Shown: one piece after another, positions 5,316 through 11,082 of the stretch
Layout of the letters: every line of letters begins with the position of its first letter
Numbering within the stretch: the first letter of the stretch is position 1
Origin: Trichosphaerium sp. ATCC 40318
Taxonomy: Eukaryota; Protista; Tubulinea
Assembly: GCA_038496445.1 (NCBI GenBank)
Contig: JALMLS010000334.1
Coordinates: forward strand, 124,001 to 188,000
Direction: 5' to 3'
Length of the DNA: 64,000 bases
Notes under the pieces: generated by a model
Databases searched by the model: none
Told to the model about the DNA's origin: nothing
Seen by the model: the letters and a program-made list of their open reading frames with translations, nothing else
Program-made: the position numbers and the translations under genes

Positions 5316-6129
5316 AGTCGTTGTACTTGCCAATGTAAGCAGGTGTGTAAGGCTTAATTTGTGGTGTCAACGCCTTTCTACTTTTGTTGAACCAGCGCTA
5401 ACAAGTACAACGAATGCAAAAGCCGCACACAGGTATGACCATCACCACGCTATTAAATAACTAGTCAACAGCCGTAATCCGCTACTCTACACGCATTTCA
5501 ACTGCTGTACGATCTTTCATGTAATTAATCGGTGTATCTCATCAATTTATAGCGATTGGCGCCAGTGGTTGGACCTATAGGTTTGTATGTGCTTTAAACT
5601 CTATTTTAATCTTATTCACGCTACTAACAGATCAATTAAACGTGTGGCAGATCAAATAGAGTCAGGTACCATCTTTAACATGTATTTTCTCGTTAACGAA
5701 ATTTAAGTAAAAATTACTAACTTTTTTGAAAGCTGCTCCTAGGCAGGTCGTTGGAAAGCTGTTCGTTCATTTGAAGTTTTACGACAGAGTGCGTGCAACC
5801 GCTTTTTTTTTTTTGCCAACACTTTCCAACTAACGCGTTAATAAGTACAACTATTCCATCAAGTTTGTAGCACCTACCATGACAATGGTACAAACGAAAA
5901 AGAAACTGACACATGTCAGATATCGCTAACTTACTCACCAGATTCGCTCATCCTTACGCACTACACAAATAGTAACGCTAGACCTCGTTATGAGAGTCGC
6001 AAAACGCAACATGGTCGAAAAAAAGACTTTTGCGCTTTCACTATGTACGTCGGTTCACACGTGAATAATCTGACACCTTTTGTAGCTAGTGCAGTCTTAG
6101 AAGTGTTGGGTAGTATCAAATTTTGCCAT

Positions 6130-9100
6130 ATGATGGTTGAAGGCGAAACAGCAAAAGAAGTAACCAAGAAAATTCAAAGCGGTCTAATAGTTATTCCCCA
6201 CGCGAGTACTGTTAAAGCATGGGACTGGGATTATGCTATATGAAGAAAGAATCACAAAACAGGCTTATTGAAAAAACAAACAAGCGTGTAGAGGGTATGT
6301 AAGTAGCGTGAGATGGTTTGTACAATAGGAAAAAAGTAAAAATAAAAGTTCAACGAGAATAGTTTGAAGACTTTGAGGGACCACTTTTCCTTTTGATTTT
6401 CGGGCTATCCTCACAAGTAAGATGCATGAAATACAAAATAAAGTGCGCGAAGGTGTGTCCAAGCTTGGCCTTAACATCTCAGACATATCTGATGACCTAA
6501 GTAAACTTATTCCACGCGAGGTAACTATTTTTTTTCGCAACTTACTTACACAAATTGCACTATTCGCTGGCGAGCGTAAACGAACCGCTCAATTAAGCAA
6601 ATGTGGAGGAAGCTTTTTATTCCGCACCAAAACCCTCCTAACACCATTAGGTGTTTAAAAAATCAACAAAAAGAGCTTTACGAGGACTATTCTTTTCAAT
6701 TGCATTTTGCGTCGTTGGTTATGTTGGCTTGGCACTATTGCCAGCCACATACTACCCAGTCTACCCGCTGCTATGGATGTTCTTAGGAGCAGCATTCGCT
6801 GGGGTGCGTAAAATAGTCGTCAATTCGTAACATAACTTCCTTTATAGCTTATGTCCATCCTACACGACTGTAGAAATGGTTCCTTCTCTTCAAACTCATA
6901 CATAAACAATGTAGTCGGGAACATCGTGCGTTTTTTTTTTTCGATTTTTTTTTTTGAACGTTTTCTGGTAAATCTTGTATTACCACAGCCTCATCAATCC
7001 CCTCTAGGTTTCTCTACCACTTATGTTACCTTTTGATTCATGGCGTTTACAGTACGAGATGCAAGGTAAAAGGTTCGAGAGCATGTACAAAAGTACGTTG
7101 AAATAACAAAAAAAAAAAAAAAAAAAAAAGGAAAGTAGTTTTGTGCGTTATTAATATGTATGCGTAGGTCTAGCAAATCGTTGGACATGGTACCTCACAT
7201 CTTTTTCAACCTTTGTTCAAGTCAACTTTGACATGAGCTTTGTTTACCGTAAGGGTAACCGTAGGAGGTTCGTTATTATTTTAAATAAGCCCTGAAGTTA
7301 TAAAACATTGTTTTGATGTATTTTAACGGGTTTTTGTTTGCCCGTTTACTGATTTTTTTTTTTTCATCTTAGAATCATCTTTTCTCTTGCTTGTATGTAC
7401 GCTTTTGGTACATTCTTTGTTTATACAATGTACCAATATCTTGGCATCTGGGGTCTATGTAAATTCTGGTTGTTGCCTTGGTTAGCTTATCACTTTTGGG
7501 TACGCATCTCTATGTGAACTTTTTTTTTTTAACTCAAGTGATCCTCTTTGGTTTTTTTTTCTGGACTAAGAAAGTGTGCACTAACGCGAGATTCAGATGA
7601 GCACATTTATTTCAGTAGCATATAAGCTACCTTTATTGGAGAACCACTCTGTTCGTTTCACTTTGGCTTTCCCTTGTAAATACCCTAAATGGCTTGAAAT
7701 TGTCACAAACGATATCAACTACGCTATTACTACAACTCGCGTGCTTTCAGAGCGTTTTCAAGAGATTCCTACGCACAATCTTCGTAAGACTTTTGGAGAA
7801 CTTAAATCCTCCCTCAGAGCTAAACTAGACAATGTAAGATGCTCCCACGCTAATATTATCTTATCGGAAACTAATCTAAGCTATTCAGGTCGATTTGCCT
7901 GAGTTTGCATTTGGCTTTGGATTGTTGCAAAAGTTGAGCTACAAGGAAGGAAAGCAACGCACAGTGCTCAGCACTATTATGGGCTGCCTTAAAGAGTTTA
8001 ACTGGATAACTGGAACCTGGCTCACTATTACCCCTATTATCGCCGCCTACGGTACGTTTAAGCTCGTTTGAATCGTTTGTAGTTCGTTTTGCAACTAGTA
8101 TAAACAATTTACGCAAAAAAAGGGCAAACTTTCGCTTTTTCAGGCAACTAAGTGCGTTTTTTAGGAATTTTCACTGTCCCAACGCAAGCAGCTACTTTGA
8201 TTGTTGCATTTATCTTTTATTGTGTCGGAGGATTCGGTATCACTGCTGGATACCACAGACTTGTTTCTCACCGCGCTTATGACTGTCATTGGCTCATTAA
8301 GGTAATTGTTTTTTTTTGGTTGAGATTCTCCGAACATATTTTTTTTTTTCGTCAAAAATACGTTTATTGACGATATTGACTGATTTTTGTTTTTAAAGTA
8401 CTTCTTGATTGCTTGTGGTACTAGCGCATTTGAAGGATCTGCTTTATGGTGGGCTACTGATCACCGTGCTCATCACAGATTTGTTGATACTGAGAAGGAT
8501 CCTTATGCTATTGTAAAGGGTTTCTGGTGGGCACACGTACGATTGCGATTTTGGTTGTTTCTGAGAGTTAACAAGCTTTTGTAGATTGGTTGGTTGTTCG
8601 TAAAGCAAGACCGTGAGAAGATTGGCAAAACTGATTGCCGTGATTTGCTAGCTGATCCTGTTATTCGATTCCAAGATGACTACTACAGCTTTTTGGCTCT
8701 TTTGAGTGGTATCTTCCTACCTGCTGCTATTTGCGGTCTAGGATGGGGTGATTGGGCTGTAAGTTATTTATTGATGGCATTTTCAGTTTATTTACAAGCG
8801 CGTAGGGAGGTTTCGCTTACGCAGCGTTTTTCAAATCTGTCCTTCTCTCACACTCTACTTTTTGCATCAACTCTGTAGCTCATTACGTTGGTGATGATAC
8901 TTTTGATGATATCAGAACTCCTAGAGATTGCTGGTGGGTGTCTCTCATGACTTTCGGAGAAGGTTACCATAACTTCCATCATCAATTCCCATACGGTGTG
9001 TTATCAATAATGTGCAACTTGGAGCGCGAACTCATTTTTTTGTAGATTACCGTAACGGTTTGAAAGATTTTGCTTTTGATCCTTCTAAGTGGGCCATTTG

Positions 9101-9621
9101 GACATTAGAGCGCTTTGGACTTGCTTTCAACGTTAAGCGCTTCCCATCAGAGGAGATTCGCAAGTGTGAACTCCAAATGAAGTTGGAAAAACTTAACAAA
9201 AAAGTTGGTATGTGTACTGGTTTTTTTTTTTTGCTGACTTTTTGGTAGCTGAATGCGATTGGGGTCCACCAGTTGAAACATTGCCTGTAATGCCACTTTC
9301 TCAAATGGAAGATCGTGTAAAAGAGGGCGCTCAATTGATACTCATCTCAGGTCTCATTCACGATGTCACTGATTTTATAGATGAGCACCCTGGTGGTAAA
9401 GGTTTTATAAAGGCTTACATTGGTAGAGATGCCACTAAAGGTAACGCTTTTTTTTTTTTTGTGATTTGTCACGTAGACACATAACCGAGTAGACAAGTAA
9501 TAATGATTTTTTTTTAGCGTTCACAGAGACTGTTTACAATCACTCAAGAGCTGCTCGTAATCTATTGGCTCGCTTCCGTGTTGCCAAAATCGAGAACGTA
9601 GAAGCTGTCAAGCAAGACTAA
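6130..9621 (+). CDS. Fusion of an inactive FAD6/DesA-like Delta12 desaturase domain with an Ole1-type Delta9 acyl-CoA desaturase and C-terminal cytochrome b5
   Basis: Exons splice in one frame. C-half has GYHRLVSH, DHRAHHRF, GEGYHNFHH and b5 EHPGG. N-half has FAD6-like KFWLLPWLAYHFWMSTF and YPKWLEI but no intact His boxes. First two exons less certain. Confidence 0.88.
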
Positions 9622-10167
9622 TTTTTTTTTGGTGTAATCTTGTAACTAGCCAAGCAACAAGAAATAAAGAGCACCACTCTCTGTAAAAAATGTTTGAAAT
9701 ACTTTGAAGGTTTTTTTTAATATGTAGAAAAGTCACAACATTCCAGGTCACGTATTACAAGTCGTCGCTCAATGCCCGCGTTTAGGATTTGACAAATCGC
9801 CAACGATTTATTCAAAGGACCGTTTTAAGGTTGGTTGAAAGCTAGAAAAACGCCAATTAAATAGATCTATCACATTAACTATTCATTTAGCGTCTTGCTG
9901 CGTATAGAACTGGACAAAACTTTTCGTAGACGGTCAATCCAATATTCTATAGTTCGTCACACGGTAGTTGTAAAGAATTGTACAAAAAAATGAATAGCAG
10001 TTTTCTTATTTTTTTCCTACTTTTAGCACGAATGTACGCACCGAAATAGGCGAGCAATATAGATAATTGGCTATATTTGATCACCGTGTACTTAAAAACA
10101 GTATTCAACCCACAAAAAATTACATTACGTTTCTGAATGCATTTCAACAAGTATTTCTTTAGTGTTT

Positions 10168-11082
10168 TTATTTACATGTTTTTTTTATTGATTTCAAAAA
10201 CATCGATGGTGACCTGTGTGCCATTCTAATGAAAGGATGGTCTAAAAGATCTTTTGCTTTTGTTCCACGTACAGAACAACATCGTACAAAATCGAGGAGT
10301 GTATCATCGGTAGTTAGTGAGATCATTGCCTCACCGATCAATTTGTTGTTTTTCCACAGGTCTTCAACGTTTTGTGGTGAGTCTACAAAACCTTTCGGTT
10401 TGTAGGTAATACACCGTCGTATCATTAGATCCATTGCCATACGGCCTATGGAGAAAGTATCGTCTGTAGGAGAGTACCCTTCGTGTTGAGCGCTCGGATC
10501 TACAAAACCTGCAGTACCTTCTATTCCATACCCGATGTCCTTTAGCTCTGGTACGCCAACAGCGTGGCCAAAGTCGGCGAGTTTCGGCGTACCGCAAGGC
10601 AAAATCATGACGTTCTCAGGTTTTATGTCGTGGTGAACAATACCTTTCTCTTGCAGTTCGCAAACTGCGTGTAAGACAGCTTTGGTGATGTATGCCGCCG
10701 AAGCCATTTTCAGAGGTTTGTTGGCTGCAAGAGAGGCTGCGTCGCATTTGGCAAGCGGTAGTATGACTGCAGGGCCGTTTGGACCCTTTTCTATGACTTC
10801 TACCGGCCGCATGATATTGTCGCTGGTCGTGAGGCGCTGTATCTTCGCTTCACGTACGAGGTTGCACCGTTCTAGCTTGTTTTCGGCCTTCGAAAGGCCA
10901 CTTCTGTTTACGATTTTCATCGCGTACGTTTCGTCAGTCCTAGTGTCGGTGCAAGTGTAAACAATGCCGCAGCCACCTTTACCGAGAATGGCGTCTTCGT
11001 CGATAACGTACTTCGATTGCTTTGTACTCTTCTTAAAGATGTTGCAGAAAGAGTCGAATCCGTGTTTGAGGGAGGAAAACAT
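10168..11082 (-). CDS. Intronless Ser/Thr protein kinase
   Basis: LGKGGCGIV, YAMK, HHDIKPEN, LADFG, GTAGFVDP; 304 aa single exon. Confidence 0.92.
   Translation of the reverse strand: MFSSLKHGFDSFCNIFKKSTKQSKYVIDEDAILGKGGCGIVYTCTDTRTDETYAMKIVNRSGLSKAENKLERCNLVREAKIQRLTTSDNIMRPVEVIEKGPNGPAVILPLAKCDAASLAANKPLKMASAAYITKAVLHAVCELQEKGIVHHDIKPENVMILPCGTPKLADFGHAVGVPELKDIGYGIEGTAGFVDPSAQHEGYSPTDDTFSIGRMAMDLMIRRCITYKPKGFVDSPQNVEDLWKNNKLIGEAMISLTTDDTLLDFVRCCSVRGTKAKDLLDHPFIRMAHRSPSMFLKSIKKTCK

What the first reader, a model, noticed from the sequence alone, without database searches (positions are those of the whole stretch)
6130..9621. Pseudo-Delta12 desaturase fused in frame to an active Delta9 desaturase-cytochrome b5
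Seen: the N-terminal half follows plastid FAD6/cyanobacterial DesA sequence closely, but all three histidine boxes are destroyed. Box 1 reads HDCRN (for HDCxH), box 2 reads FDSWRLQYEMQ (for F.SWR..HxxHH), box 3 reads NDINYAITT (for HDINVHIPHH). A phase-0 intron at 7834-7888 joins AKLDN to VDLPEF and runs directly into an Ole1-type domain with intact HRLVSH/HRAHH/HNFHH and b5 HPGG. Known: these His residues bind the di-iron centre and are essential. Inference: an intact frame across many exons with loss of only the metal ligands suggests a maintained pseudoenzyme. It could act as a lipid-saturation sensor, a dimer partner, or a docking or channelling module for a real Delta12 enzyme. The architecture may be shared by other amoebozoan Delta9 desaturases; I cannot check that here.
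Basis: partly seen in the sequence, partly recalled or inferred. Interest (0 to 1): 0.85.

Follow-up and report, generated by a model that had tools for sequence, protein, structure and literature searches.

The report
Dead desaturase fused to live desaturase
One gene here makes a working fat-desaturating enzyme (Delta9, with its own cytochrome b5) that carries at its front a second, Delta12-type desaturase body that has lost its iron-binding histidines; the same dead add-on is kept under strong selection in many amoebae and other protists, yet no paper I could find describes it.

Summary
Spliced transcript contigs from four studies show one mRNA (5' end ~6402, ATG 6422, stop 9619-9621, 15 exons) encoding 712 aa.

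Residues 1-293 are a clear FAD6/DesA homologue (E 4e-48) that keeps only 2 of 16 family-conserved histidines but 52 of 101 other conserved positions. Residues 294-712 are an intact Ole1-type Delta9 desaturase plus cytochrome b5. The 7834-7888 intron is spliced in frame in all four runs.

The architecture is not unique. More than 55 database proteins share it, from dictyostelids (named 'Delta 9 fatty acid desaturase ScdA'), Balamuthia, Clydonella, Ceratiomyxa, Capsaspora, Willaertia, Acrasis and Paulinella. Only three glaucophyte versions keep intact His boxes.

In intronless relatives the dead module has dN/dS of 0.03-0.12, like the catalytic module and far below the linker. It is therefore a maintained pseudoenzyme module, most likely a relic of an ancient Delta12-Delta9-b5 fusion. 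Its role is untested; I favour a built-in partner or acyl-binding scaffold.

I found no paper describing it. The scan's earlier notes hold no record of this architecture on other DNA.

The parts
6402..6421 (+). Transcript 5' end and short 5' UTR
   Evidence: the X8 contig begins at 6402, preceded by the SMART template-switch oligo tail. The X1 and X2 contigs begin at 6410 and 6411.
6422..6520 (+). Exon 1 (aa 1-33): start codon and cytosolic N-terminus of the FAD6-like module
   Evidence: It aligns with the N-termini of P0015, P0016 and P0018.
6651..6803 (+). Exon 2 (aa 34-84): first transmembrane hairpin of the dead module
   Evidence: Joint 6520|6651 in three runs; hydropathy.
6848..6925 (+). 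Exon 3 (aa 85-110), with the box-1 remnant HDCRN at 6863-6877
   Evidence: Active enzymes read HDCGH here.
7008..7092 (+). Exon 4 (aa 111-138), with the box-2 remnant FDSWRLQYEMQ at 7032-7064
   Evidence: (3' end deduced from contig length; donor GTACGT). Active enzymes read HxxHH here.
7168..7267 (+). Exon 5 (aa 139-171) of the dead module
   Evidence: The segment that follows box 2 in active enzymes is missing.
7373..7499 (+). Exon 6 (aa 172-214): second membrane hairpin, with the conserved GxWGxxKFWLxPWxxYHFW stretch
   Evidence: H212 is one of only two conserved His that are kept.
7597..7833 (+). Exon 7 (aa 215-293), with the box-3 remnant NDINYAITT at 7708-7734; end of the dead module
7834..7888 (+). 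55-nt phase-0 intron that joins the dead module to the Delta9 module
   Evidence: joint 7833|7889, GT..AG, present in contigs of X1, X2, X8 and X11.
7889..8051 (+). Exon 8 (aa 294-348): linker and first transmembrane helix of the Delta9 module
   Evidence: The linker evolves fast in relatives.
8165..8301 (+). Exon 9, with Delta9 His box 1, HRLVSH, at 8254-8271
8399..8536 (+). Exon 10, with Delta9 His box 2, HRAHH, at 8462-8476
   Evidence: Pfam FA_desaturase.
8585..8758 (+). Exon 11: Delta9 module, second membrane hairpin
8806..8995 (+). Exon 12, with Delta9 His box 3, HNFHH, at 8968-8982
   Evidence: FA_desaturase 32.4 bits, above the cut-off; SCD1 4ZYO, E 3e-10.
9046..9207 (+). Exon 13: end of the Delta9 module and the hinge helix
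9249..9440 (+). Exon 14: cytochrome b5 domain, with HPGG at 9386-9397
   Evidence: Cyt-b5 46.3 bits; H661 and H687 kept.
9518..9621 (+). Exon 15: end of b5 and the TAA stop at 9619-9621; the 3' UTR runs to at least 9692

Best explanation
Shown. One gene (mRNA ~6402 to at least 9692; CDS 6422-9621; 15 exons) encodes a 712-aa membrane protein of three modules.
- aa 1-293: a FAD6/DesA-type (omega-6/Delta12) desaturase fold that cannot hold the di-iron centre. It keeps 2 of 16 family-conserved His and lacks the segment after box 2.
- aa ~294-330: a fast-evolving linker.
- The rest: an intact Ole1-type acyl-CoA Delta9 desaturase with a C-terminal cytochrome b5.

It belongs to an old, widespread family (dictyostelid 'ScdA' type) in which the dead module is under purifying selection as strong as the catalytic one. 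Glaucophytes have the same three-module protein with intact His boxes.

Inferred.
- The ancestor was a Delta12-Delta9-b5 fusion. Delta12 catalysis was lost, and the fold was retained for a non-catalytic job.
- The Delta9 module makes 16:1/18:1 with electrons from its own b5.

For the dead module I commit to these odds:
- About 45%: a built-in partner. This would be an intramolecular stand-in for the second subunit of a desaturase dimer, needed for assembly, stability or positioning of the Delta9/b5 unit.
- About 30%: an acyl-chain or lipid-binding pocket that senses or hands over lipid.
- About 10%: some other chemistry.
- The remainder: unknown.
For: Single spliced transcript: (4 runs, 4 studies; 2.2-kb contigs through all introns; template-switch tail at 6402).

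Gene model: all splice sites are GT..AG and the ORF is 712 codons.

Homology of the N-module: E 4e-48 to an active DesA-like protein and 1e-75 to other fusions. The N-modules of relatives pass Pfam FA_desaturase.

Specific loss of His: motif table; 2/16 against 52/101; p 0.0055.

Intact Delta9/b5: (109 of 114 family-conserved columns kept, including all His).

Distribution.

Purifying selection.
- P0016/P0017: N-module 0.029, Delta9 0.063, linker 0.22.
- P0013/P0019: N-module 0.105, Delta9 0.085, linker 0.39.

Equal conservation in dictyostelid orthologues: N-module 81.7% against Delta9 79.0%.

Co-placement of the N and C modules in trees.

Confident predicted fold of the dead module in a relative: pLDDT above 90 over residues 20-210.

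Precedent for a His-poor, iron-free FAD6 fold that binds a fatty-acid-like ligand and serves as a structural subunit: PDB 8XKS chain K (bioRxiv 10.1101/2024.09.02.610899).

Fungal Delta9-b5 works in a self-associated complex: bioRxiv 10.64898/2026.10.23.760519, abstract seen.
Against: - No close orthologue of this species' gene was available. Selection was measured in relatives about 45-55% identical, not here.
- The RNA evidence is assembled contigs, not raw reads. A second, Delta9-only isoform from an internal start (Met in exon 8) or cleavage in the linker cannot be excluded.
- The AlphaFold model of a relative has pTM of only 0.60, so no confident interface between the modules supports the partner idea.
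- P0010 pairs the dead module directly with b5 and has no Delta9 module. That could hint at a redox role.
- Some members (Diphylleia; P0055, P0081, P0087) keep part of the His boxes, so loss was stepwise and some may retain activity.
- There are no biochemical data at all.
Confidence: 0.8

Rival explanations
1. Neutral passenger. The N-half is a decaying Delta12 relic kept open only because translation of the Delta9 enzyme has to pass through it.
For: All catalytic His are gone and a segment after box 2 is deleted. The N-module evolves somewhat faster than the Delta9 core over long distances: 46% against 60% identity to P0015.
Against: - dN/dS of 0.03-0.12 in relatives, several-fold below the linker, which is under the same read-through constraint.
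- 17 of 17 family-conserved N-module positions are kept in the window.
- The module is retained in Amoebozoa, Heterolobosea, Filasterea and Rhizaria.
- The predicted fold is confident.
Confidence: 0.03
2. Two genes. A separate pseudo-Delta12 gene lies next to a Delta9 gene that starts at the Met in exon 8, and the contigs merely bridge them.
For: An in-frame ATG lies about 90 nt into exon 8. In run X11 the assembly is split into two contigs.
Against: - The joint 7833|7889 is a canonical spliced junction seen in all four runs, including X11's downstream contig, which carries 29 nt of exon 7.
- The same fusion is an uninterrupted ORF in intronless relatives.
Confidence: 0.02
3. The N-module is still an enzyme. 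It uses a different metal site or different chemistry, or it regained function with non-His ligands, and b5 feeds it.
For: - Several His are replaced by residues that could bind metal (N, Q, E, Y) in the window.
- P0010 joins the module directly to b5 without a Delta9 module.
- D/C of box 1 and N of box 3 stay conserved.
Against: - The replacing residues are not conserved across the family (R, S, K, G, L and gaps), so there is no shared alternative ligand set.
- Only H212 is conserved family-wide.
- The related FAD6a subunit with partial boxes shows no iron density.
Confidence: 0.1
4. Lipid sensor or regulator. The dead module binds an acyl chain or lipid in the old substrate tunnel and tunes Delta9 activity or stability to membrane unsaturation.
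For: - The fold and tunnel-lining membrane helices are conserved.
- The FAD6a/FADL precedent holds a fatty-acid-like ligand without iron.
- Selection is as strong as on the enzyme itself.
Against: There is no direct evidence. The structure tools gave no pocket or interface information, and pTM is 0.60.
Confidence: 0.3

Closest known systems
Fungal Ole1 / SdeA-type acyl-CoA Delta9 desaturase with fused C-terminal cytochrome b5 (structural relative: SCD1, PDB 4ZYO/4YMK)
   Same: Residues 294-712 have three intact His boxes, four membrane helices, a hinge helix and b5 with HPGG. They are about 50% identical to fungal enzymes.
   Different: The window protein carries an extra 293-aa N-terminal desaturase-fold module that plain Ole1 lacks.
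Plastid FAD6 / cyanobacterial DesA omega-6 (Delta12) acyl-lipid desaturase
   Same: The N-module is a full-length homologue at 26-33% identity (E down to 4e-48). It has the same helix order and conserved non-His motifs.
   Different: 14 of 16 conserved His are lost and the segment after box 2 is deleted. It is fused and lies outside any plastid context. The defining catalytic feature is not met.
Dictyostelid 'Delta 9 fatty acid desaturase ScdA' and relatives (D. purpureum DICPUDRAFT_52931, D. discoideum, Heterostelium, Cavenderia, Balamuthia, Capsaspora, Willaertia, Acrasis)
   Same: They have the same three-module order and a His-less N-module.
   Different: They are only 28-31% (N-module) and 48-53% (Delta9) identical to the window protein. 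The window protein sits in another clade, made of unnamed environmental sequences plus a locust RefSeq entry. I found no paper that comments on the N-module.
Glaucophyte FAD6-Delta9-b5 fusion (Cyanophora paradoxa EP00741_P011027, Cyanoptyche, Gloeochaete)
   Same: The module order and linker position are the same.
   Different: Their N-module keeps all His boxes, is 50-56% identical to plant FAD6 and scores 111 bits on Pfam FA_desaturase. It is presumably active, whereas the window's is dead.
Chlamydomonas FAD6a / FADL, a subunit of the Orf2971-FtsHi chloroplast import motor (PDB 8XKS chain K)
   Same: It is a FAD6-derived fold with only partly conserved His boxes and no iron density. It holds a fatty-acid-like ligand and serves as a structural membrane subunit. 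It was the best non-SCD1 structural match of the relative's model.
   Different: It is a separate protein of the chloroplast inner envelope, not fused to a Delta9 enzyme. It is only weakly similar in sequence (E 4e-9), so its loss of catalysis was most likely independent.

Membership tests
Ole1-type acyl-CoA Delta9 desaturase-cytochrome b5 fusion | Three His boxes: HxxxxH, HxxHH, HxxHH | tested here: met
   HRLVSH, HRAHH and HNFHH are present. All family-invariant His are kept.
Ole1-type acyl-CoA Delta9 desaturase-cytochrome b5 fusion | Sequence and fold match to FA_desaturase / SCD1 | tested here: met
   Pfam FA_desaturase scores 32.4 bits on one exon alone (cut-off 29.7). SCD1 4ZYO matches at E 3e-10. 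The relative's model against 4ZYO gives TM 0.82.
Ole1-type acyl-CoA Delta9 desaturase-cytochrome b5 fusion | C-terminal cytochrome b5 with HPGG and a second axial His | tested here: met
   Cyt-b5 scores 46.3 bits; H661 and H687 are kept.
Ole1-type acyl-CoA Delta9 desaturase-cytochrome b5 fusion | Delta9 desaturation of 16:0/18:0-CoA | not testable with these tools
   This needs yeast ole1 complementation and GC-MS.
FAD6/DesA omega-6 (Delta12) desaturase | Full-length sequence homology | tested here: met
   blastp E 4e-48 to P0023. Identity to FAD6 of green algae is 26-29%.
FAD6/DesA omega-6 (Delta12) desaturase | Di-iron ligands: HDCGH, HxxHH, HxxHH and further conserved His | tested here: not met
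   Only 2 of 16 conserved His columns are kept (H90, H212).
His-less FAD6-like + Delta9 + b5 fusion (ScdA type) | The three modules sit on one polypeptide in this order | tested here: met
   Spliced contigs, the 712-aa ORF and alignment over the whole length to 53 members.
His-less FAD6-like + Delta9 + b5 fusion (ScdA type) | The N-module falls in the clade of fused His-less modules | tested here: met
   The window lies in a 99* clade of 10 and a 100* clade of 35 fused modules. All 55 fused His-less modules lie on one side of a branch (SH-aLRT 87, quick tree).
His-less FAD6-like + Delta9 + b5 fusion (ScdA type) | Purifying selection on the dead module | tested here: inconclusive
   Met in relatives (dN/dS 0.03-0.12). 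It could not be measured for this species because no close orthologue was available.

The most novel reading that the evidence does not exclude
The FAD6-Delta9-b5 fusion is very old. It is found in Amoebozoa, Obazoa, CRuMs, Discoba, Rhizaria and glaucophytes, and in an unrooted Delta9 tree plain fungal Ole1 sits inside the diversity of fused enzymes.

In the most novel reading, the ancestral eukaryotic Delta9 enzyme was a two-desaturase machine. Most lineages then turned the Delta12 half into an obligatory lipid-sensing or allosteric subunit that sets Delta9 output. This would be a built-in membrane-fluidity regulator that nobody has studied, although it sits in Dictyostelium's main Delta9 desaturases.
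Probability: 0.15. Interest if true: 0.8.

Novelty: new variant of a known kind. Interest (0 to 1): 0.62.

Why it matters
Membrane desaturases are classic enzymes. Their oligomeric state, their electron-donor docking and the way cells tune them to membrane fluidity are only partly understood.

This is a natural, widely conserved case in which a whole second desaturase body, stripped of its metal site, has been kept welded to the working Delta9 enzyme for what the trees suggest is a very long time. Three points follow.

- Pseudoenzyme biology. It is a membrane-embedded example with an active counterpart still alive in glaucophytes. That gives a ready-made comparison of the enzyme before and after loss of catalysis.
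- Annotation. Dozens of proteins filed as plain 'Delta 9 desaturase', and one filed as a locust gene, have this extra module.
- Experiments. Dictyostelium carries the same architecture and is genetically tractable, so the role of the dead module can be tested directly.

For this window alone, the gene is one more member of that family, from a lineage with no close sequenced relative in the databases searched.

Tried and rejected
- Exon-by-exon Pfam scan of the N-half gave nothing. The pieces are too short, so I established homology by blastp of the spliced protein against fetched relatives.
- Atlas look-alike search with exon 7 gave only noise.
- PDB sequence search with exon 7 gave no real hit.
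A donor at 7093 fits exactly and matches homologues.
- No second desaturase copy lies in the window (tblastn).
- The window's own protein is not in the protein collections. The best hits are 42-47% identical in the N-module and 52-60% in Delta9. So dN/dS for this species, a fold of the window protein itself and its exact taxon could not be obtained. The spliced protein has no reference and I did not type it into any tool.
- I could not name the organism. My Physarum guess is unsupported: no near-identical protein turned up in any collection searched.
- Eight literature searches found no description of the dead N-module or of the glaucophyte fusion. The Cyanophora lipid paper (PMC11714747) lists desaturases but does not mention a fusion in its main text, and its supplement is not held.
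Full report
**Anatomy**

The region is intron-rich eukaryotic DNA of about 38% GC. I laid assembled contigs of four public runs from four studies on 6000-9700.

- In X1, X2 and X8 a single contig of 2203-2251 nt runs from 6402-6411 to 9692 and skips fourteen GT..AG introns.
- X11 holds the same joints on two contigs.
- The X8 contig is preceded by the tail of the SMART template-switch oligo at 6402. This marks the cDNA 5' end, and the first ATG is at 6422.
It is the 3' end of the upstream gene.
- One joint was hidden by the masked poly(A) run at 7097-7141. The contig lengths fit only exon 4 = 7008-7092 and exon 5 = 7168-7267, with donor GTACGT. That reading aligns residue for residue with homologues.

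The resulting model has 15 exons with canonical splice sites, a 2136-nt CDS and a 712-aa product with its stop at 9619-9621.

**The two halves**

Residues 294-712 are an ordinary, intact Ole1-type enzyme.
- His boxes HRLVSH, HRAHH and HNFHH are present.
- Single exons give Pfam FA_desaturase and Cyt-b5 matches, and SCD1 structures match at E 3e-10.
- HPGG and both axial His of b5 are present.

Residues 1-293 match active omega-6 desaturases over their whole length.
- blastp gives E 4e-48 to a DesA-like protein, with 26-33% identity to FAD6/DesA.
- 117 columns are at least 90% conserved in 37 active FAD6/DesA sequences, and 16 of them are His. The window keeps 2 of those 16 (H90, H212) but 52 of the 101 others (Fisher p 0.0055).
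- The stretch that follows box 2 in active enzymes is deleted.
- Hydropathy shows the expected membrane hairpins in both halves.

**The architecture is shared**

An exhaustive phmmer search with exon 7 found only six clusters that were not repeat-type hits: four carry the dead module in front of a Delta9 domain, one (P0003) is a short fragment of the same kind, and one (P0010) joins it directly to b5. Word-indexed searches with a relative's N-region and with an alignment of seven fusions then returned dozens of 600-800-aa proteins that cover both halves.

Named members with a His-less N-module:
- Dictyostelium discoideum and D. purpureum, Heterostelium, Cavenderia, Tieghemostelium, Acytostelium, Polysphondylium and Coremiostelium. 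The UniRef name is 'Delta 9 fatty acid desaturase ScdA', and there are two paralogous types.
- Balamuthia, Clydonella and Ceratiomyxa.
- Capsaspora, Willaertia and Acrasis.
- Paulinella.
- Diphylleia keeps part of its His boxes.

Only three proteins keep every box, and all three are from glaucophytes: Cyanophora paradoxa, Cyanoptyche gloeocystis and Gloeochaete wittrockiana. Their N-module is 50-56% identical to plant chloroplast FAD6.

Placement of the window protein:
- It keeps 109 of 114 columns that are at least 90% conserved among 53 fusions, including all 17 in the N-module.
- Its nearest relatives are unnamed environmental sequences at 42-47% (N-module) and 52-60% (Delta9) identity. Nothing closer exists in the collections searched.

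**Trees**

In a quick IQ-TREE of 73 N-modules:
- all 55 fused His-less modules lie on one side of a branch (SH-aLRT 87);
- the glaucophyte modules form a clade (96*);
- standalone FAD6/DesA form the remainder;
- the relations between the three groups are unresolved.

The window's N-module and its Delta9 module have the same nearest neighbours, so the two halves have travelled together. In the unrooted Delta9 tree a 100* branch groups plain fungal Ole1 with type-2 dictyostelid fusions and the glaucophyte fusions. This is compatible with an old fusion followed by loss of the N-module in some lineages. The tree is unrooted, comes from a quick search and includes some fragments, so this is a lead only.

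**Selection**

Five relatives are uninterrupted ORFs on metagenome contigs. Nei-Gojobori estimates:

| Pair | Dead module | Delta9 module | Linker |
|---|---|---|---|
| P0016/P0017 | 0.029 (dS 0.82) | 0.063 | 0.22 |
| P0013/P0019 | 0.105 | 0.085 | 0.39 |
| P0013/P0014 | 0.080 | 0.052 | 0.29 |

The linker is under the same need to stay in frame, so the low values for the dead module reflect selection on its own sequence. Between D. purpureum and P. violaceum the dead module is 81.7% identical and the Delta9 core 79.0%. This was measured in relatives, not in the window species.

**Structure and precedent**

AlphaFold2 of relative P0015 with a 53-row alignment gives mean pLDDT 85 and values above 90 across most of the dead module. 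pTM is only 0.60, so the mutual placement of the modules is not settled.

Foldseek matches the model to SCD1, to cytochrome b5 and to chain K of PDB 8XKS/8XQW. That chain is 'FADL'/FAD6a, a FAD6 homologue in the Chlamydomonas Orf2971-FtsHi import motor. The authors report partly conserved His boxes, no iron density and a fatty-acid-like ligand in the pocket (bioRxiv 10.1101/2024.09.02.610899). So a FAD6 fold that has given up catalysis and serves as a lipid-holding structural subunit has been seen before, in another setting and probably independently.

**How it most likely works**

Shown:
- There is one transcript and one reading frame.
- The Delta9-b5 unit is intact.
- The N-module is a FAD6 homologue without its metal ligands.
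- The module is conserved and selected in relatives.

From established knowledge of Ole1/SCD enzymes:
- The Delta9 unit desaturates 16:0/18:0-CoA with electrons passed from its fused b5.
- Both desaturase families have cytosolic N- and C-termini, so the fusion is topologically consistent.

Inferred:
- The ancestor was a two-enzyme fusion, as in glaucophytes.
- After Delta12 catalysis was lost, the fold was kept for a non-catalytic role.

I rank the candidate roles as follows:
1. A built-in partner that takes the place of a second desaturase subunit. From my own knowledge of published work, Ole1 and plant FAD2/FAD3 form dimers. [quoted passage not shown]
2. An acyl or lipid-binding pocket that senses or hands over lipid, as the FAD6a precedent suggests.
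3. Residual or new chemistry. This is disfavoured because no alternative ligand set is conserved.

Neutral carry-over and two separate genes are both essentially excluded.

**Comparison and novelty**

The C-half is a member of the Ole1 family. The N-half is a homologue of FAD6/DesA but fails that family's defining catalytic feature. The whole protein is a member of the ScdA-type fusion family already present in databases, where it is annotated only as a Delta9 desaturase.

Eight full-text searches found no paper that describes the dead module or the glaucophyte fusion. ScdA appears only as a control transcript and a phylogenetic marker. The library lacks most subscription journals, so prior description cannot be excluded.

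I rate it a new variant of a known kind: an Ole1-type enzyme with a conserved pseudo-desaturase module. The window gene is one further member.

**Limits**

- The spliced window protein could not be submitted to the remote searches or the folding tool, so relatives stood in for it.

Noticed in passing
window 6044-6295 (+): This is the 3' end of the upstream gene: a 41-nt intron at 6045-6085, a last exon from 6086, a stop at about 6241-6243, and a transcript contig that ends at 6295. The gap to the next gene's 5' end (6402) is only about 107 nt.
   Followed up: partly
P0030 (XP_049850075.1, 'uncharacterized protein LOC126320773 [Schistocerca gregaria]', 712 aa, 51.6-kb contig): A RefSeq locust protein is a member of this protist fusion family and sits in the window's clade. 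It is either a contaminant scaffold from a locust-associated protist or a gene transfer.
   Followed up: partly
P0010 (360 aa, 1129-nt JGI contig): Here the dead FAD6-like module is joined directly to the hinge and cytochrome b5, and the whole Delta9 module is missing. It could be an exon-skipped isoform, a separate gene or an assembly artefact. If real, it bears on what the dead module does with b5.
   Followed up: no
P0008 (424 aa, Logan contig): In this fusion member the Delta9 module itself looks eroded. The third box reads ENFHH and the conserved AH before it is replaced. This may be a fully dead copy.
   Followed up: no
P0047, P0057, P0138/P0257 (Cyanophora, Cyanoptyche, Gloeochaete): Glaucophytes encode a FAD6-Delta9-b5 fusion with all His boxes intact in both desaturase modules. 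This is a candidate single-polypeptide 18:0 to 18:2 enzyme. The main text of the Cyanophora lipid paper I read does not mention it.
   Followed up: partly
Delta9-domain tree: Plain fungal Ole1 sequences group (100*) with type-2 dictyostelid fusions and glaucophyte fusions, apart from the window's type. This hints at an ancient duplication of the fused gene and a later loss of the N-module. The tree is unrooted and from a quick search only.
   Followed up: partly
window 7097-7129 (+): A run of about 33 A sits inside intron 4. It made the read tool mask the exon 4/5 joint.
   Followed up: yes
L001 8570-9790 and L003 2769-4088: In two intronless relatives the fusion gene is followed, on the opposite strand, by a DUF1295 (PF06966) membrane protein gene. 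This is a conserved neighbour in that clade.
   Followed up: no
window 10168-11082 (-): An uninterrupted 304-aa ORF with protein-kinase motifs (HHDIKPEN, DFG) lies downstream on the opposite strand.
   Followed up: no
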